Assembly (NCBI GenBank): GCA_033442325.1
Contig: JAWQFM010000031.1
Location: 338,395-348,035 of the forward strand
DNA length: 9,641 nt
From: Salpingoeca rosetta
Lineage: Eukaryota > Protista > Choanoflagellata
Reading direction: 5' to 3'
This document shows, piece after piece, positions 1 to 8,300 of the stretch. Both the position numbers and the translations under genes were made by a program. The notes beneath the pieces are model-generated. The model searched no databases. It saw only the letters and a program-made list of their open reading frames with translations, and had not been told where the DNA came from. Position 1 is the stretch's first letter; every line of letters begins with the position of its first letter.

Positions 1-36
<36 letters not shown>

Positions 37-48
37 CACACACACACA

Positions 49-79
<31 letters not shown>
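1..79. repeat. (CA)n microsatellite, intronic
   Basis: Near-perfect CA tract with two G interruptions. Confidence 0.97.
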
Positions 80-80
<1 letters not shown>

Positions 81-129
81 ACCTTTTTCACCCAATCCCC
101 TAAACCCCCGACCCCTCATTCCTGCTGAC

Positions 130-1085
130 CCGGGTGGACTGGAAGTGGATATAGTAGGTCCTGTTTTCCTCTGGCACGAGGAGCGCCACGCCGTTGTCGC
201 GATTCACACGATCACGGACGGGCCTGTTCTTCACCAGCTTCACCGACGCGCTGCTGTTCAGCGCCCGCAAGTCTCCGCGATTGCACGGCTTTGGCCACGG
301 GCGCAGAGTGGATGCGTGCATGGAGGCGAACATGTACATTCGTGTGTGTATGTGTGTGTGTGTGTGGTGGGGGGGGGGGTGCACGTGCACTCAAAGCTTC
401 ACAACAACCGCAACCAGAATAACAGCATACAACACAACACAACACAACACACAACACAACACAACACACCACAACACACGCACGCCCAAACACACCTGTG
501 CCAGGCAGAAAGGGGTGAGCGTGATGATGCCTTTGGGCGTTGTGGATTTCTCGTTCTTGTAGTATCTCAACGATGTCGCATTCAGCTTGAACAGCCGTTG
601 CTTCCACGTCGTGTGCGAGTACCCTGAATACACACACACCATACGATAGCGTATCAACAGTGAGCAATCAACAAACAGTACAGTGCCGGGCACATCACAA
701 TACAGCATAAAACCAAACTCCAACCGCAGAACATCACAATACAGTGCAAACCAAACTCCAACCAGAGAACATCACAATACAGCATACAACCAAACTCCAA
801 CCAGAGCACGTACATCACAGTGCAAACCAAACACCAACCACAGAGCGCAACAACAACGAAACAAAATCCCCCCCCCACACACACACGCGCCTTTCCGTTA
901 CGTTGCCACTTCTCGCAAACACGCCCATTTCCCTTCATTTCCTCACCCATCTTTGTGCCTTGCTGCGCCAGCTCAATGTGGCCTGCTCGCACAACCTGCG
1001 CCTGCGGTGCCACGCGCACCAACTCCAACACTGCCCTGCCGCGCACACCACCATCCGCCATTGTCGTCGAGTTGTTGTTGTTCAT
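130..1085 (-). CDS. PH-domain protein, 5' part; exons 1085..947, 623..496, 288..130, continuing beyond the left window edge
   Basis: Phase-consistent GT-AG junctions (ATGG|gtgagg..ttcag|GG; CAG|gtgtgt..caaag|CCG; CGG|gtcagc) give MNNNNSTTMADGG...VVRAGHIELAQQGTKMGYSHTTWKQRLFKLNATSLRYYKNEKSTTPKGIITLTPFCLAQPCNRG...NGVALLVPEENRTYYIHFQSTR. WKxRxFxL, LxYYK, PKGxIxL and RTYY match PH strands b1-b7. The C-terminal helix would lie outside the window. Start uncertain (ATG at 1085 or 1061, or an upstream exon). Confidence 0.85.
428..479. repeat. (ACAAC)n pentanucleotide repeat, intronic
   Basis: acaacacaacacaacacaac... next to the donor at 495. Confidence 0.9.
692..846. repeat. 38-39 bp minisatellite, 4 copies, in intron 624..946
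   Basis: Units at 692, 731, 769 and about 808; consensus acatcacaatacag(cata/tgca)..accaaactccaacc.ga. Confidence 0.92.
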
Positions 1086-1207
1086 CGTCGTCGTGTTCCA
1101 GCTGTTTGCTGAATTTCGTACAAAAATATCCACCAATCCTCACAAACCGCAGCGTCAAACCAACGAAGAGCACTGGACACCTGGTGCGTGGTCGGAGCAG
1201 CAGAGCC

Positions 1208-4200
1208 TCAGCGCGTAGGCGCGTTGCTTGCAGCCAGCAGAGCATCCACACGCTCAAGCTTGTCGATTGCCGCATCAACCAGCGAGACAGGGCATCCGAG
1301 TGCCCATCCCACACCTGACCCTGACCGATAACGCCGCAGCGCACCAGGCGCGGCCTGTCAGTGCACGAAATTGTTCGTGCTGTTTGGCGTGTTTCGTTTC
1401 AGTCTTAACATCTAGTAACATGCATACATGTCAGCAGTCAACAAACAATGCAACAAACAAATGGCCAAACGAACAACTGAACAGCCTATGAACCGAAATC
1501 ACCCAACAGCAGCAAACAAAACAATTTGCACACACACACACACACACATCACAAGCCACCCGATCATGGTGGACGAACCCGACCCAAACCACCCATGCCT
1601 CCCAAGTGAGCTTGTGGAGAGTCAGCATGAGCAAAACTGGACAGCGTTGAGACAAAGTCAGACGATTGAAGCGAGGACGTTGATGACAACTTGATGGGAA
1701 TCTGCTCAACAAACTGACCAATCCCAGTGGCAGCGTCTTCGTGCGGGGCCCAGTGCTCACTGTAAAGGCCACTTGTGTCCTTCAACAGCTTCCCAAACTG
1801 CTGCAGGCGTTGGTGATCACGATGAGACAGTTTGGTCTTAACGTGGGCACCGGGGCGTTTTGTGCTTGAGGAGGAACGACGGCCCAGCGCACCACCGCCT
1901 TTATGACCACGAGCACCGACCGTGGAAGACAGCTCCCCCAACTGCACGTGGAAGGGTTGGGGTCGAGGTACTCTGTGAGCCAGTAGCAGCCACCGAGCAA
2001 ACGCTGGCGTTGCAGCGTACGTCGGACGGCTTTTGGAGTCAAATAGGGCACGAGAGGTCTTGGTCGTATGTGAGTGGGCCGGATGTTGAATGTGGGCAGA
2101 GAAAGGTTGTGTCCACATCCTCAGCGCACGTGAAGAGCTTTGTCGCACAGCCTCATTCAGGTTGCCCTCCTTCAATGCACGCACGCATTGCTTCAGGTGC
2201 ACATGCCCATACTTAAGCGCGTACCCCTCCACAAGGTCATGCATCTCGTGATCATGTGTCATGTCCTTCAGCCTTCGATCGCCATGCTCTTCGAGCAGGC
2301 CTCGCTCCTTCATCACACGCATAGACGCCTGCGCAAGGATGGCATCGCCCTCTCGCGTGTCCACCCAATGCGCTCCAGCTCGCCGTTGGTTCGTCAAGAA
2401 TGACATGAGGTTCTTGTCCAGTGGTTGTATGACGTCTGTAGATGCGTGGCCAGACGTCAAGAGAGGTGAGAGCTTTTCAAGCAGGCGCCGCGTGACGGCT
2501 TTGCTCTGGACCCGCTCACCGCCGCACAGCTCGTGAACGTCGCTGGCACGTAGCGGCTCCTTGCTTGCGGCCACCACCGCCAACGTTCCACGCAGCACGC
2601 CTTGTAACGCGTTCTTGACCTCTGTATCCCCACCAGCCGCTTCATCAAGCTGTGCCTGAATGCGGGAAAGCGTGTGCGCATATTGCCGCTCGGGTAGACT
2701 CAACTTGCTCTCCTCATCATCAGCCAAGATGCGGCGCACGTCCCCCATCGTGAGCGATCTTGTCGTCTCTGCCTCGGCTTCGTCAACAGCTCGGGAAATT
2801 GCACGGACAATTACAAACGCCTTGTCGCCATCGCCAGCGTTTGCTCGCCTCGAAACATAGCGAACGATCATGTCCACCACTCGGTCTTTGCCGTCACAGT
2901 CCAAAGAGCTCAGGCTTGTGAGCTGAACAATCTTCTCACGGGCAGTTGCCTGAAGATTTGCCTTGAGATGATCATCAGCGTTGACAGCGAGAGGATGCAT
3001 GCTGTTGAGCAACTCTGCCGTGTTTCCGTCTGGCGGGGACGTTACAACGAAGCGAACAGCCGATGGAAGGCGCTCCAAGAGTTGCAGCAGTTCTCGGGCG
3101 TCGTCGGCATGCAATTCGTCCACTGCATCCAATAGAATGATGACGCCATATTTTTGCGTGTGCGGGCGTTGCTTGCCAAGCATTGATTCCAGCGGATGAG
3201 CAAGCGCCACAGTCACGAGTTCCGACAAGGGACCCCGCTTCACACGCGTGAAGAACTTCTCCCACTGCTCCTCGTCTTGGGCAATACATGCATATTCTGC
3301 TCGCACTGCAGGAAGCCGCGAGGCCAGCGCGAATGCAAGGGTTGTGATGATCTTGTGCACGCTTTCGCGACAGGTCTCGTCGCGCTTGCAGAAGAAGTAG
3401 GTAGCAATATGTGGCGGTTGCAGTTCACCTGGATCATCACCACGCTGCTCGAAATGTCCAAATTGTCTGACCAGCTGCACGGCAGTCCCCGATCGCGCAA
3501 TGCTGCCCGTGCCCTGAATCCATAGCACGCGCCGCTCAGGGGCGGTTGACGGCAGCCTCAGCCACTCTTCGAAAGTTTCAAGCATCTTCAAGCGTGAACC
3601 TTGCAAGAGCAGACGGGTGTAGCTGTTGAGGTCCTGCGCAAAATCAGCTGGCTGCAGCAGAGATCTCAGCTTCGCCATGAGGTGATTGCCAATGGAGGGT
3701 GGTGGTGGTGGTGGTGGTGGGGCTGTCGAAGTTGAAGACATGGCTGTCACGGCTGAGGGTGCCGGCTTGACAGCGTGCACGACAGCTTCCGCCACAGACG
3801 CTGCGCCACCGAGAAAGGCTCTGAAGGCCAACACGCCCACGTCTTTGCCAGGGAACCAAGAACGCAGCTCGGGAATGTTAGTCAATTTCCTGCATTCGTC
3901 AAGGTGAAGCCGTTTCTTGTCATCTTGGATCCACTGATCCATGGCAAGCAAGAGGCGGTCAACCTTGATGTCATCATGCTGGTCAAACCCGTTCCAAGAC
4001 CAGAACGCGGGCGCGTCTTTAGCCTCCACATCAAAAAGGATGTTGAATGGGTGCCCTGAGTGGAGGACCAGCACGATGATACTAAGTGCAAGGACGAGCT
4101 GCCGCGATGCTTCCTGAAATGCCGCCAATTGGTCGGTGCAGTGTAACAGGGCAACGATGGTGCGCAAACCATGTGCCTTGTCCCTGTCAGTCACGAGCCG

Positions 4201-5120
4201 GAACGGACAAAACGTAAGCTGCAGTAAATCCTCAGCCTCATCTGACGCACAAGTGTCAATTGTGGCGAAGAAGTTCGCTCCCTTCTTGTTGATATGGCGT
4301 GCCAGGACTCGCATGCGCAGTGCAGGAGACACGTGAGGCACACGTGCTCCTGCGATAGCCTTGCACAGCTCAAGTGCAATCTTGGCAAGCCAAGCTGTCC
4401 CTGTGGTTGGCGTCAAGCAGTGGGGAATGACCCGCTTCACCTCCTTAAAGAGCAGGGTTCTCAGTTGTGATGACGCGATTGGTGAAGGCAAGTGCCAGTG
4501 CTCTAAAGCCTTGATTGCGACAGACAACTTCAAGCATAGAAGAGAGAACGAGGCAAACCCCCCAAGAAGCATGTGGAGATGTGAGCGGAAACGCGAGTGA
4601 TGGCATCTGCATCTGAAGGACAAGTGGAACCGAAGCAAGACAGCAACTTTGCTTGAGTGCGCCGGGAGCGCAAGCAACAATGCAGGCAGGCACAAGAACA
4701 ATGCCGTGATGTGGTGCGAGCAAAGCAATGCCAAGCAAAAGAGCAGGGATGAGGCTGTGGGTTTGCATTTACATGCACTGGAGACTGGACCCTGACGTCA
4801 ACAGAAGAACGCACTGGGTCGGTGGAAGGCAACAAAGCCTTGTATTGATCAATCAGCTTGCAGATGATGTGATCTTGTCCCAAGTGTCTCTGAACAGCAT
4901 CTTGAAGTGGCGTTAAGTCGCTCTCAATGTTTAAGAAAGGTGTATCCGATGTGGGTGGGCAGTATTGTTGAAGCTTGGATACAAGCTCTTTGCCAGTCTG
5001 CTGCACACGCCCAGGAACCCCGAACGTTGCTGATGCAACCACCATGACCTCCCTCTCGTCCAAGTGGACGAACGCATTCACAATCTTCGCGAACAAATCA
5101 TTCCGGGTCTCAGTCGCCAT
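1208..5120 (-). CDS. NLR-like STAND protein: death-fold(DED)-like N-terminus + unknown domain + degenerate NACHT + winged helix; exons 5120..4815, 4527..1579, 1354..1208 (about 1133 aa)
   Basis: ATG in AAGATGG context at 5120. Intron 4814..4528 (CCA|gtgcgt...tctcttctatgcttgaag|TTG, phase 0) joins ORFs 4530..5330 and 1564..4734. Intron 1578..1355 (CGG|gttcgt...ctgacag|GCC, phase 0) adds AAPGALRRY...VDAAIDKLERVDALLAASNAPTR*; if unspliced, the gene stops at 1564. NACHT motifs: GSRLKMLETFEEWL, VLWIQG, YFFCKRD, IITTLAFALA, VIILLDAVDE, RFVVTS, VVAASKEPL, YALKYGHVHL. Confidence 0.8.
1579..4527 (-). CDS. Large 2949-nt exon of the NLR-like gene containing the NACHT and winged-helix module
   Basis: Uninterrupted 983-codon frame. 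Degenerate Walker A at 3490..3513, Walker B hhhhDxxDE at 3115..3144, sensor-1 region at 3031..3057, winged-helix region about 2330..2600. Confidence 0.9.
3697..3720 (-). repeat. (CCA)7CCC coding octa-proline linker
   Basis: STAPPPPPPPPSIG immediately upstream of the NACHT domain. Confidence 0.95.
4815..5120 (-). CDS. First exon of the NLR-like gene, 102-aa helical DED/death-fold-like domain
   Basis: MATETRNDLFAKIVNAFVHLDEREVMVVASATFGVPGRVQQTGKELVSKLQQY...LTPLQDAVQRHLGQDHIICKLIDQYKALL. Length and amphipathic-helix spacing resemble DEDs. Ends at a gtgcgt donor. Confidence 0.6.
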
Positions 5121-5335
5121 CTTCTTCCTTGTTGGCGGTGAGGGATCGGAGAGCCACGATGGTTGTGTTCTTTCCTCAACGTGTGGTTGAAATGTGAGAA
5201 ATGTGGACTTCCTCCTTTCCTTCTCTTCGGTTTCATGCATTGATGGAACTGATTGTGGAACATTACGGGTGACATTCATAATCGTCAACGCGCACGACCT
5301 CATGTTTGTATGTTTTGGTCGCGCATACAAGGACT

Positions 5336-5348
5336 CACAGCTACACAG

Positions 5349-5445
<97 letters not shown>

Positions 5446-5545
5446 GCTACACAGCTACACAGCTACACAGACAGCTACACACGCACACACACAGCTACAC
5501 ACACATACAGCTACACACACACACACAGCTACACAGCACAACACA
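5336..5545. repeat. Compound (CA)n + (CACAGCTAC)-type repeat between genes A and B
   Basis: About 90 bp CA tract flanked on both sides by repeated acagctac units. Confidence 0.93.
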
Positions 5546-5569
5546 CGCCACGACACGTCATGTGTCACA

Positions 5570-6882
5570 TCACACGTCCTCGTCTTCGTCAGTAACGAGT
5601 CCGTCCACGAACATGTGTGCGAGCGGGTCGCCGTCCTTGCGTATGAGCACGTGCCGCAGCTGCGCCTTGACGCTCTCCTCGTTGGCGTACTCCGGCAGGG
5701 ACGCCGTCAGCAGCATCATCAGCACCTGCTTGATGGTCTTCTGCAGGCAGTGGTGCGGCGACGGGTGCCCGCCAACCAGCAGCTTGCGCGCCTGCTGCCC
5801 CGACGAGACGCGAGGCAGTGGCGACTTGGCTATCGTCGTCTTCGTTGTCGTCGCTGTGTTGGCGTCGGTCGCGTTGCTGGGCGAGACGGCTGTGTGCGTC
5901 AGGGTCTCCTTGCCCAGCAGCACGGCGTCCGTCCTGAAGCGGTAAAATGCCTTGGCGCGATCCTCAACACGCAACGCGGGCGTGGTGCTGGTGGCGGTGG
6001 AGAGAGATGAGGAGGAGGGTGATGACAGGGTGGATGTGCTCAAAGACGTGGCATCCTTGCCTGCAGGCACCAGCACTCCCGCATTCAACAGCTGCGACGC
6101 CACGGCCTGTGTATATGTGATTGTGTGCATGTGTGTGTGTGCGCACATGTGTGCACATGTGTGAGCGTGGGTGCATGCGCATGTGTGGGTGTGGGGGTGT
6201 GTGTGTCAGAACGACAAGCAACACCAATCAGCAGTGGTACACCAGACCACACCACAAGCAGACCACACACACACCACACACACACACATACACGCGCACA
6301 CACATACACACACACATACATACATACACACGCGCACACGTACCTGCGCGTTCTGGCGCTGCGTAACGGACGGCGGAAAGGTAACGCGACGGCGGATTTG
6401 GCGGCGGACACGCAGCACAATGTCACTCGGGCTGCAGTTGGGGAGCAGGAGGGAGGGACGAGAGGGATGGAGGAGGTTTAGGTGGGAATGGCGACATGTC
6501 GTGAGGCAGGAGTTCCGTGAAAAGAGCTCAGTCGTCACCAAACACAAACAAACAACCAACCAAACAACCAACCAAACAAACAAACAAACAAACAAACAAA
6601 CAAACAAACAAACAAACAAACAAACACGTGCCACTGCACCTGATGTGTGCAAATTCTGCAGACGTTGCGAGCGCCTCTGTGTGCGGGAGCGGCGTCAGCA
6701 GCAGCTGTTTCACGTCCTCCAGGCGACACGACTCCACATCCTGTCAACGAGGGCGCAGGGCATATGGTCGTGGTGGGCAGCGACGTGAGGGGAGAAGAAG
6801 AAGCAAATGGTGCGTCAAACATGACACTTGCACAAGGCGTGCAACTACGCGCAATTACACACACACACACACACACACACGC

Positions 6883-6913
<31 letters not shown>

Positions 6914-7952
6914 ACTCACACGCACACGCACACACGCTCAGCTCACCCGGCCGTTGATGGCGACGACGACGTCGTGTTTGCGCATTCCGGACACGTGTGC
7001 CGGCGACGCGCGGCGCAGATGGACGACTTCCGGCGATCCGGTCCGGTCCCGCCCAAACTCTATCCCGAGCCGCTCGCACACCGACGGCAGCGACTGGCAA
7101 CGTGCGTGTATGTGTGTGTATGTGTGTGTGTATGAGTGAGTGAGTGAGAGAGTGACCTCGGGCGTGCATTTGTGGGTACGTGATCGAAAACACATGCCTG
7201 CGTGCAATCACGTCGTGGTTGCTTCACGTATTGGGGCGGTGCACACTGCATGCAGTGTGCCATCACGAAGCACAGCACGTCATCTGCCAACAAGTGCCTC
7301 ACCTGTGGCACTGCGCGTGCGGGGATGACGATGGAGGTGTGCATGTGCTCAGGACCCGTCGTCGGCGTACGCGAGAGAGTGTCAAAGTCGCCATGATCCG
7401 AGATGGCCGTGATCAAATCCCTGAACACGCCAAGCACATGTGCTCAAGGTGAGAGGGCATGATAACAAGGAGGTGGCAGTTTCAACATCCGCGGCCAGAA
7501 ACCGACATCATGAACGCACGCACGCACACACACGCACGCAAACACACACACACACACACACACAACACGACGCAACCTAACACACCACATCCCCCAGCCC
7601 CTCAAACACACACACACATACACACACACACACACACACACATACACACACACACACACACACACGTCCGCGTTCACACTCACGCGCCGGGCACGACGGC
7701 GTCGTCGACGGAGAAGATGCCGATGTCGCGGACGAGGCGGCGGTCAATGAGGGCGATGTGCAACAGGTGCGACAGCAGCGACACGCCAGTGTGCTCATAC
7801 TGCATGTTGAGAGGTTGGGATGGATGGGAAGTGAGGGGTGGGGGATGGATGGGAGGTGAGGGTGGTGGAGGCGGTTTGTTTGTTGCAATAAATGGCCAGG
7901 ATTTGCAAGTCAAACCAGCAGCGAACACAACGCTTATGCACACACACACGCG

Positions 7953-8033
<81 letters not shown>

Positions 8034-8300
8034 CGCTGCCCTCCCCTCCCCTCCTCACACATCCCACAAAGCATCCGTGCTCACGTCCAGAACGTGTCTT
8101 GGGGCGAGTTCCGGCTCGCGCGCGTGGAAGAAGGATGTGAGGGAATCAAAGACGCTGGACAGGCGGTTTGCGACATCACGATTTAAGCGGAACAGCGCAT
8201 CTGTGGAGCGGACGACCGAGTTGACGGCCATGTCAAACACACGCCGCCACAGCCGCTGATAGTGTGTGTGTGTGTTTGTGTGTGTGTGTGTTTGTTTGTT

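What the first reader, a model, noticed from the sequence alone, without database searches (positions are those of the whole stretch)
2410..3513. Pseudo-ATPase NACHT: three nucleotide-contacting motifs degenerate in an intact ORF
Seen: Walker A is GTGSIARS instead of GxxGxGKS (G>A, K>R; 3490..3513). Sensor-1 is VVTSPP instead of TSRP (3034..3036). The winged-helix motif is PLDKNLMSFL instead of HKSxxDFL (H>D; 2416..2418). Walker B (LLDAVDE) and the structural motifs remain, and the 983-codon exon has no stop. Inference: coordinated loss of nucleotide binding in a retained protein, i.e. a nucleotide-independent scaffold, decoy or inhibitor NLR comparable to P-loop-independent partners in plant NLR pairs.
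Basis: partly seen in the sequence, partly recalled or inferred. Interest (0 to 1): 0.7.

Follow-up and report, generated by a model that had tools for sequence, protein, structure and literature searches.

The report
Switch-dead NACHT protein in a choanoflagellate
One Salpingoeca rosetta copy of a NACHT-WD40 sensor family has lost every key nucleotide-contacting residue and its WD40 sensor, yet has stayed an open, constrained gene, so it is probably a nucleotide-independent adaptor or regulator, not a switch.

Summary
The minus-strand gene is PTSG_12916 of Salpingoeca rosetta, with two exons and 1129 aa. It encodes an NPHP3_N/NACHT-type STAND domain. Walker A reads GTGSIARS, sensor 1 reads TSPP and the winged-helix motif reads PLDK.

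- **Family comparison:** six own-genome paralogues and about 100 other family representatives keep GK[ST] (107/107), the sensor-1 Arg (106/108) and the winged-helix His (106/108). This copy alone lacks all three. It has also changed the G of the GxFL motif and the D of HKxxxDFL.
- **Other S. rosetta NPHP3_N loci:** all have a canonical P-loop.
the paralogues carry 10-13 WD40 repeats. This copy stops at the WD40 boundary, and no WD40 trace lies within 11.5 kb downstream. Exon 1 encodes a death-fold, DED-like domain that Pfam misses.
- **Selection:** my two-ratio codon model gives omega 0.20 on this branch (profile interval about 0.10-0.30). Omega = 1 is rejected (p = 2e-18). The key codons differ from the family codon by 2-3 bases, so the changes are old.

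The verdict is a retained pseudo-NTPase. A scaffold or inhibitor function is inferred only, and there is no genomic NLR pair.

The parts
4815..5240 (-). CDS exon 1 of PTSG_12916 (aa 1-142)
   Evidence: tblastn of the public protein P0001 on the window. The frame and the exon end were read from the sequence.
4821..5108 (-). DED-like death-fold domain (aa ~45-140), six helices
   Evidence: AF2 pLDDT 77. VIA-align against 48,161 chains: PEA-15 DED Z 9.2 (rmsd 2.8, 84 aa), caspase-8 DED Z 8.4, vFLIP MC159 Z 8.2, FADD DED Z 7.5, then DD, PYD and CARD entries. Pfam is blank. At least 9 more copies exist in the genome.
4528..4814 (-). Intron, 287 nt, GT...AG with a polypyrimidine tract
   Evidence: Read directly from the sequence; boundaries.
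1564..4527 (-). CDS exon 2 (987 codons, aa 143-1129) plus stop codon at 1566..1564
3679..4515 (-). Middle region (aa ~147-425) shared with the paralogues' N-terminal halves; ends in a poly-Pro tract; fold unknown
   Evidence: tblastn and blastp to paralogues C4a and C4c. No Pfam match. The Atlas search was uninformative.
3037..3579 (-). NPHP3_N (NACHT-type) nucleotide-binding domain match
   Evidence: Pfam PF24883, E 6.1e-13, 49.7 bits
3490..3513 (-). Degenerate Walker A, GTGSIARS (family: GTGGLGKS)
   Evidence: Codons: K is AAG in all six paralogues and CGA here (3 differences); G is GGC/GGA and GCG here (2 differences).
3115..3135 (-). Walker B, LLDAVDE, acidic residues intact
   Evidence: D, D and E are 108/108 in the family and kept here
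3031..3048 (-). Sensor-1 strand VVTSPP (family: VVTSRP), Arg replaced by Pro
   Evidence: Codon CGC/CGA in the paralogues, CCG here.
2812..2829 (-). HD1 signature GDKAFV (family: ADGVFL); the conserved Gly is Lys at 2823..2821
   Evidence: Gly in 100/108 of the family
2395..2424 (-). Winged-helix motif PLDKNLMSFL (family: PLHKTVNDFL); His to Asp and Asp to Ser
1567..2394 (-). C-terminal helical region homologous to the paralogues' linker between winged helix and WD40; ends about 15 residues before the point where their first WD40 blade starts
   Evidence: Alignment; tblastn extent to 1690
1..1563 (.). Downstream non-coding, low-complexity DNA; no WD40 remnant here or in the next 10 kb
   Evidence: tblastn of three full paralogues against the window plus L011 at E <= 0.01; ORF list

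Best explanation
PTSG_12916 is a diverged, lineage-specific paralogue of the S. rosetta NACHT-WD40 (NWD-like) STAND family. Its layout is a DED-like death-fold domain, a shared helical region, a NACHT domain, a winged helix and a helical linker. It has lost the residues that hold the phosphates of ATP/ADP and couple them to domain closure: the P-loop Gly-Lys, the sensor-1 Arg and the winged-helix His. It has also lost the whole WD40 sensor. The protein has nevertheless been kept under purifying selection. It therefore most likely cannot act as a ligand-triggered nucleotide switch. It more likely works as a constitutive, nucleotide-independent adaptor or regulator that uses its death-fold domain and its NACHT surfaces to join, cap or sequester other signalling proteins. 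What is shown: the sequence changes, their specificity to this copy, the retained STAND fold, the absence of WD40, the death-fold prediction and omega below 1. What is inferred: loss of nucleotide binding, and the adaptor or regulator role and its partners. What is not tested: expression.
For: Motif loss is exact and unique among 109 family sequences, and all other S. rosetta NPHP3_N loci keep GK[ST]. At 74 family-conserved, outgroup-polarised columns this copy changed 34%, against 1-10% in each paralogue. The changed columns include G, G, K, R, H and the motif D. The two-ratio GY94 model on 457 codons and 7 paralogues gives omega_W 0.20 against a background of 0.23 (p = 0.51). Omega_W = 1 is rejected (2dlnL = 76, p = 2e-18), and the profile interval is about 0.10-0.30. 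For the NBD alone, omega is 0.34 against 0.185, and omega = 1 is still rejected (p = 7e-5). An open frame of 987 codons tolerates at most about 0.03 neutral substitutions per site. The K, G and R codons differ from the family codon by 3, 2 and 2 bases, which means silent changes accumulated after the replacements. The AF2 model of aa 425-965 has pLDDT 82, and Foldseek matches MalT, Cdc6/ORC, CED-4, NOD2 and NRC. The paralogues carry 10-13 WD40 repeats and this copy carries none. The N-terminal domain is DED-like. Precedent exists for P-loop-less or truncated NLRs that still function: Pb1, ADR1-L2 and NLRC4 P-loop mutants (PMC3478704) and NRG1C (10.1101/2021.01.27.428547).
Against: No expression evidence was obtained. 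Synonymous sites on this branch are saturated: pS is 0.67-0.74 and the fitted branch is 2-6 times longer than the paralogues' branches. GC3 has fallen to 0.63 from about 0.74, so a stationary model may underestimate omega. One third of the family-conserved positions are lost, and no close orthologue (above 50% identity) was found in the databases searched, so long-term conservation across species cannot be shown. Walker B D/D/E and the Walker A Ser are kept, which leaves room for residual nucleotide or metal binding. No partner was identified, and the one complex prediction gave no verdict.
Confidence: 0.55

Rival explanations
1. It is a decaying relic: a partial duplicate that lost its WD40 region and is drifting. 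It may be transcribed but has no function, and its frame happens still to be open.
For: The WD40 sensor is gone. At family-conserved columns 34% are changed, against 1-10% in the paralogues. The protein end branch is 1.36, against 0.03-0.5 for the paralogues. GC3 has dropped towards the bulk composition. No orthologue and no expression evidence were found.
Against: Omega is 0.20 with an upper bound of about 0.30, and omega = 1 is rejected at p = 2e-18. An open 987-codon exon allows at most about 0.03 neutral substitutions per site, while the branch carries more than 1 synonymous substitution per site. There are no frameshifts against the paralogues. The GT-AG intron and the 142-codon exon 1 are intact. 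Multi-hit codons at the key sites show that the replacements are old.
Confidence: 0.2
2. It still binds nucleotide. The non-canonical P-loop (GxGxxARS), together with an intact Walker B, would give a hydrolysis-dead, permanently loaded or 'locked' STAND module, not a nucleotide-free one.
For: The Walker B Asp-x-x-Asp-Glu and the Walker A Ser are kept although a third of conserved columns changed. The NBD remains constrained, with omega 0.34 and omega = 1 rejected. From general knowledge of P-loop NTPases, Lys-to-Arg often keeps some binding while abolishing hydrolysis.
Against: Five pocket positions changed together: the two P-loop Gly, the Lys, the sensor-1 Arg and the winged-helix His. The His and Arg are phosphate contacts in solved NLR structures (established knowledge of NLRC4, NLRP3 and NOD2). 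The GxFL signature is also changed. No family member among 108 tolerates Ala-Arg at this place.
Confidence: 0.15
3. It is a mis-annotated fragment of a longer gene whose WD40 exons lie elsewhere, so the protein is a normal sensor apart from its motifs.
For: The frame ends exactly at the domain boundary where the paralogues' WD40 blades begin.
Against: No WD40-like sequence lies in any frame within 11.5 kb downstream. The region after the stop is low-complexity DNA. The paralogues encode NACHT and WD40 in one uninterrupted frame.
Confidence: 0.03

Closest known systems
NACHT-WD40 (NWD-like, Pfam NPHP3_N) STAND NTPases of choanoflagellates; S. rosetta paralogues on contigs C4, C15 and C23, Barroeca monosierra and Monosiga brevicollis proteins
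   Same: Homologous over about 850 residues at 32-46% identity. It has the same middle region, NBD, HD1, winged helix and linker, and it lies inside the S. rosetta clade of the family tree.
   Different: There are no WD40 repeats. The Walker A Gly-Lys, the sensor-1 Arg, the winged-helix His, and the GxFL Gly and motif Asp are all replaced. The protein branch is 3-40 times longer. It has a DED-like N-terminal exon that the canonical paralogue C4a lacks.
Plant NLRs that work without a P-loop (rice Pb1, which lacks the motif; Arabidopsis NLRs with degenerate P-loops; helper ADR1-L2) and mouse NLRC4 P-loop mutants
   Same: A STAND/NLR protein whose function does not depend on the canonical nucleotide switch and which is proposed to act as a scaffold or adaptor (PMC3478704).
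   Different: These belong to a different STAND clade (NB-ARC or animal NLR) and have an LRR sensor. Here three separate nucleotide contacts are lost, not just the P-loop. No function has been shown here.
Truncated or atypical NLR modulators: Arabidopsis NRG1C, Nicotiana NRCX
   Same: A family member that lacks a canonical domain and may modulate its full-length relatives (10.1101/2021.01.27.428547; PMC9851556).
   Different: NRG1C lacks the N-terminal signalling domain and sits next to NRG1A and NRG1B. This gene keeps its N-terminal domain, lacks the C-terminal sensor, and has no family neighbour on its contig.
Death-fold pseudo-enzyme regulators such as cFLIP (DEDs plus an inactive caspase-like domain)
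   Same: A DED-type interaction domain is fused to a catalytically dead copy of the family's enzymatic module. This is a working analogy from established knowledge.
   Different: The dead module is a STAND NTPase, not a caspase. No homology is claimed beyond the death fold, and no binding was shown.

Membership tests
NACHT-type STAND NTPase (Pfam NPHP3_N, PF24883) | Significant match to the family profile | tested here: met
   E 6.1e-13, 49.7 bits against a cut-off of 24.8. Own-genome paralogues are found at E 1e-80.
NACHT-type STAND NTPase (Pfam NPHP3_N, PF24883) | Walker A GxxxxGK[ST] | tested here: not met
   GTGSIARS here. G and K are 107/107 in the family.
NACHT-type STAND NTPase (Pfam NPHP3_N, PF24883) | Walker B hhhhDxxDE | tested here: met
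   ILLDAVDE here. D, D and E are 108/108 in the family.
NACHT-type STAND NTPase (Pfam NPHP3_N, PF24883) | Sensor-1 Arg (TSRP) | tested here: not met
   TSPP here. R is 106/108 in the family.
NACHT-type STAND NTPase (Pfam NPHP3_N, PF24883) | Winged-helix His that contacts the bound nucleotide | tested here: not met
   PLDK here. H is 106/108 in the family.
NACHT-type STAND NTPase (Pfam NPHP3_N, PF24883) | NBD-HD1-WHD fold | tested here: met
   AF2 pLDDT 82. Foldseek matches MalT, Cdc6/ORC, CED-4, NOD2 and NRC at probability 1.00. The model leans on the paralogue alignment.
NACHT-type STAND NTPase (Pfam NPHP3_N, PF24883) | C-terminal repeat sensor (WD40 in this subfamily) | tested here: not met
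   None in the gene or within 11.5 kb downstream. The paralogues have 10-13 repeats.
Pseudoenzyme (pseudo-NTPase) | Homologue of active enzymes with catalytic or binding residues replaced | tested here: met
Pseudoenzyme (pseudo-NTPase) | Retained under purifying selection, not decaying | tested here: met
   Omega 0.20 (interval 0.10-0.30), omega = 1 rejected, frame open. Caveat: dS is saturated and no orthologue is available.
Pseudoenzyme (pseudo-NTPase) | Expressed as RNA and protein | tested here: inconclusive
The runs that hold the stretch are of unknown kind. No paper or supplement gives expression values.
Pseudoenzyme (pseudo-NTPase) | Lacks nucleotide binding and hydrolysis | not testable with these tools
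   Needs biochemistry. It is inferred from the residues only.
Paired sensor/helper NLR (plant type) | Genetically linked partner NLR | tested here: not met
   This is the only family member on contig C31. The upstream neighbour is an unrelated gene (notes 2 and 3).
Death-fold superfamily (DED-like) | Six-helix bundle superposable on DED, DD, PYD or CARD | tested here: met
   Z 9.2 to the PEA-15 DED, and about 45 of the top 50 rows are death-fold entries. Foldseek E-values alone are not significant. For helical bundles a Z under about 13 can reflect only a common arrangement, so the strength lies in the consistency of the list.
Death-fold superfamily (DED-like) | Sequence-profile membership (Pfam DED, Death, CARD or PYD) | tested here: not met
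   No Pfam hit at E <= 0.1.

The most novel reading that the evidence does not exclude
S. rosetta may have a pre-animal death-fold signalling network in which DED-like domains link STAND modules, a ROCO GTPase and other enzymes. Within it, PTSG_12916 (DED-like plus dead NACHT, no sensor) and paralogue C15c (DED-like plus WD40 sensor, with the NBD core deleted) would be complementary, nucleotide-independent components. They would either assemble with each other or act as cFLIP-like brakes on the ATP-competent NACHT-WD40 proteins.
Probability: 0.1. Interest if true: 0.8.

Novelty: new variant of a known kind. Interest (0 to 1): 0.5.

Why it matters
Naturally P-loop-dead or truncated NLRs are known as helpers and brakes in plants. 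[quoted passage not shown] This gene is a clean natural experiment. Six ATP-competent paralogues sit in the same genome beside one copy that has lost the switch and the sensor yet is still constrained, and it is joined to a DED-like domain. S. rosetta now has a fast knock-out method (10.1101/2024.07.13.603360), so it is directly testable whether such a protein regulates STAND signalling or cell death before animals. The claim stays modest: it rests on one species, with no orthologue and no expression data yet.

Tried and rejected
- **Spliced transcript contigs:** The look-up of encoding contigs with P0001 found none on record.
- **Literature:** a full-text search for the gene id gave 0 papers. 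Supplements of three S. rosetta papers gave only an OrthoMCL cluster line; the FPKM table is cut in storage.
- **PDB sequence searches:** profile A1 was swamped by WD40 hits because full-length paralogues were in the alignment. The NACHT region of C4a alone gave no hit.
- **Complex prediction:** the DED-like domain of this gene against that of C15c gave no verdict and is not evidence either way.
- **Middle region:** the Atlas feature search of aa 147-425 scored below 0.8 and is uninformative.
- **C4a N-terminus:** hhalign of the DED-like profile against the C4a N-terminus gave no relation.
- **Sub-region omega:** the estimate for the HD/WH part ran to an absurd branch length (t = 17), so only the direction is used.
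- **WD40 exons:** an origin as a mis-annotated fragment with distant WD40 exons is rejected.
- **Spliced model:** I built no spliced model of my own. The spliced protein used throughout is the public record P0001, by id. Exon-level searches were made by reference.
Full report
**Identity and gene model.** The window is G000:C31:338395-348035 of a 55-Mb, 68-contig genome. A word search returned the window's own protein as PTSG_12916 of Salpingoeca rosetta, 1129 aa (P0001). Earlier notes of the scan name the same organism. The minus strand holds a 1056-codon open frame at 1564..4734. The public protein maps as:
- exon 1 at 5240..4815;
- a 287-nt GT...AG intron at 4814..4528;
- exon 2 at 4527..1567 (987 codons), with the stop at 1566..1564.

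I built no spliced model of my own. P0001 was used by id, and exon-level searches were made by reference.

**The observation.**
- GTGSIARS lies at 3513..3490.
- The Pro in TSPP lies at 3036..3034.
- The Asp in PLDK lies at 2418..2416.
- LLDAVDE lies at 3135..3115.

Pfam assigns residues 386-566 of the frame to NPHP3_N, a NACHT-type P-loop domain (E 6e-13), with a weak TANC1-like winged helix behind it.

**Is the degeneracy specific to this copy?** The own genome holds about seven close paralogues, at 41-46% identity over the NACHT-WH region, on contigs C4 (three), C15 (three) and C23. All of them read GTGGLGKS, ILIDALDE, VVTSRPE and PLHKTVNDFL.

A search of 1.84 billion representative proteins gave 227 relatives, with the best non-self hit at 38% identity. 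In a 109-sequence alignment of the core:
- the P-loop G and K are 107/107;
- Walker B D, D and E are 108/108;
- the sensor-1 Arg is 106/108;
- the winged-helix His is 106/108.

Four sequences lack one of the three nucleotide contacts. Only this gene lacks all three.

It also replaces a second P-loop Gly, the Gly of the GxFL signature of HD1 (100/108 in the family) and the Asp of HKxxxDFL (98/108). The remaining, more distant NPHP3_N loci of S. rosetta all have GK[ST].

The motif roles (P-loop Lys, sensor-1 Arg and winged-helix His as phosphate contacts) come from established knowledge of solved NLRs such as NLRC4, NLRP3 and NOD2. They were not measured here.

- *No WD40 sensor.* The paralogues are NACHT-WD40 proteins with 10-13 WD40 repeats. 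This gene aligns with them up to about 15 residues before their first blade and then stops. No WD40-like sequence exists in any frame of the rest of the window or of the next 10 kb. The DNA after the stop is low-complexity.
- *A death-fold domain.* Exon 1 encodes a domain of about 100 aa that Pfam misses. It recurs at nine or more other loci, among them the C-terminus of a ROCO-like LRR-Roc-COR protein, a PNP_UDP-like protein and a coiled-coil protein. Its AF2 model (pLDDT 77) matches the PEA-15 DED at Z 9.2 (rmsd 2.8 over 84 residues), then caspase-8, vFLIP and FADD DEDs, then DD, PYD and CARD entries. These fill nearly all of the top 50 rows. Foldseek alone was not significant. I read this as a DED-like death fold, supported by the consistency of the hit list more than by any single score.

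**Fold of the dead module.** The AF2 model of aa 425-965, built with a 16-row alignment, has pLDDT 82 and the NBD-HD1-WHD order of helices and strands. Foldseek finds MalT, Cdc6/ORC, CED-4, NOD2 and NRC. The architecture is therefore retained. The confidence leans on the paralogue alignment.

**Phylogeny.** In a maximum-likelihood tree (the quick search; the careful one did not finish) the gene falls inside a clade made only of S. rosetta copies (SH-aLRT 97). Three Barroeca monosierra proteins form the sister group and a Monosiga brevicollis protein lies further out. B. monosierra is described as a close relative of S. rosetta (10.1101/2024.07.13.603360).

Forcing the gene outside S. rosetta plus Barroeca costs 11.3 lnL units (AU p = 0.017). 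That group was named after the tree had been seen. Its end branch is 1.36 substitutions per site, against 0.03-0.5 for the other S. rosetta copies. No protein above 50% identity was found in either database.

**Selection.** The evidence comes from several directions:
- *Pairwise estimates.* NG86 gives dN/dS of 0.20-0.32 for this copy against each paralogue, the same range as among the paralogues. Its pS of 0.67-0.74 is near saturation, and its GC3 is 0.63 against about 0.74.
- *Branch model.* I wrote a two-ratio GY94-F3x4 likelihood model on the 7-taxon tree with 457 codons. It gives omega 0.20 on this branch and 0.23 elsewhere (p = 0.51). Fixing omega at 1 on this branch costs 2dlnL = 76 (p = 2e-18). 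The profile interval is about 0.10-0.30.
- *By region.* Split by region, the NBD shows omega 0.34 against 0.185 in the paralogues (p = 0.057). That is a hint of relaxation there, but omega = 1 is still rejected (p = 7e-5). The estimate for the rest is unstable.
- *Conserved columns.* At 74 family-conserved columns polarised by near outgroups, this copy changed 34% and each paralogue 1-10%. Two thirds are still kept, against 42% identity overall.
- *Open frame.* 3.3% of random substitutions in exon 2 would create a stop. An open frame therefore allows at most about 0.03 neutral substitutions per site at the 5% level.
- *Codon age.* The Lys codon is AAG in all six paralogues and CGA here. Gly GGC/GGA became GCG, Arg CGC became CCG and His CAC became GAC. 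Two or three differences per codon mean that silent changes followed the replacements. The altered residues therefore long predate any possible recent neutral phase.

Together these results argue that the protein was maintained after it lost its nucleotide contacts.

*Caveats.* Synonymous saturation and the GC3 shift could bias omega downward. The fitted synonymous length of this branch is 2-6 times that of its sisters, which I cannot fully explain. Gene conversion among the canonical copies or non-stationary composition are possible causes.

**Expression.** This is the main gap. Twelve public runs hold the stretch, but their kind is only guessed. Three 2026 RNA runs are kept as raw reads. Papers and held supplements gave no expression value for the gene.

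**Mechanism.** A STAND protein without a sensor and without the residues that read the nucleotide cannot be a ligand-gated switch. It keeps an interaction domain of the death-fold type and the oligomerisation-prone NACHT scaffold under constraint. The most economical reading is a nucleotide-independent adaptor or regulator of other death-fold or NACHT proteins.

Known parallels are:
- P-loop-less plant NLRs, and helper NLRs that signal with a dead P-loop (PMC3478704);
- truncated or atypical NLR modulators, NRG1C (10.1101/2021.01.27.428547) and NRCX (PMC9851556);
- by analogy, cFLIP.

Unlike plant pairs, there is no linked partner. A complex prediction between two DED-like domains gave no verdict.

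**A second non-canonical member.** Paralogue C15c has a DED-like exon joined directly to the GxFL/HD1-WH-WD40 part. It lacks the whole NBD core. Both DED-bearing members of the family therefore lack a working nucleotide site, one through point changes and one through deletion. This suggests, without showing, that the two are functionally related.

**Verdict.** It is a new variant of a known kind (degenerate or truncated NLR-like regulators), in a lineage where none was described. Interest is moderate. It would rise if expression and partners are shown.

Noticed in passing
window 4821..5108 (-); L035 1501-1833, L036 1498-1818, L037 1501-1791, L038 1504-1797, L040 1510-1800, L041 1495-1824, L043 1519-1803 and 2107-2349: A DED-like death-fold domain of about 100 aa, invisible to Pfam, occurs at 10 or more S. 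rosetta loci. These include the C-terminus of a ROCO-like LRR-Roc-COR protein (P0063), a PNP_UDP-like protein (P0068), a coiled-coil/AAA_23 protein (P0125) and a tandem pair on contig C4. Richter et al. 2018 (PMC6040629) reported no Death or CARD domain in choanoflagellates.
   Followed up: partly
L014 (G000:C15:316000-325000), minus strand, about 6681..7500 and downstream: Paralogue C15c joins a DED-like exon, through an intron, directly to the 'ADDVFL' HD1 motif, winged helix and WD40 repeats. The whole NBD core, from Walker A to sensor 1, is absent. It is a second nucleotide-site-less family member.
   Followed up: partly
L031 (G000:C15:208000-217500) 1841-4012 and 3838-7701: A tandem pair at 87% identity. 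C15a is a 724-codon NACHT-only frame with canonical motifs. It lies immediately upstream of, and overlaps, the frame of C15b, which starts inside the P-loop region and carries the WD40 repeats. This could be a frameshifted single gene or a recent partial duplication. The pairwise dN/dS between them is 0.57.
   Followed up: no
codon alignment of 7 paralogues: The fitted synonymous length of the PTSG_12916 branch is 2-6 times that of its sister copies, although the tree places it inside the same species-specific clade, and its GC3 is 0.63 against about 0.74. Gene conversion among the canonical copies or a composition shift might explain this. It is unresolved.
   Followed up: partly
P0003 (Barroeca monosierra), sensor-1 motif: One Barroeca family member has TSQET in place of TSRPE (sensor-1 Arg to Gln) with an intact P-loop and His. 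Single-site degeneracy occurs in 4 of 108 relatives.
   Followed up: no
L032 (G000:C23:1133000-1142900), frame 953-8137: Paralogue C23 carries very long poly-Gln runs, more than 60 Q in one stretch, inserted between Walker A and Walker B and again in the WD40 region, within an open 2395-codon frame.
   Followed up: no
L014 892-4590: A 3.7-kb run of N (withheld or masked) lies inside the WD40 region of C15c, so its repeat count could not be read.
   Followed up: no
window 1..1563: The DNA downstream of the stop is strongly strand-skewed low-complexity sequence (GC skew -0.27, AT skew +0.25), with CA/TG microsatellites that give His-Thr or Cys-Val runs in translation. No coding signal was found.
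   Followed up: no
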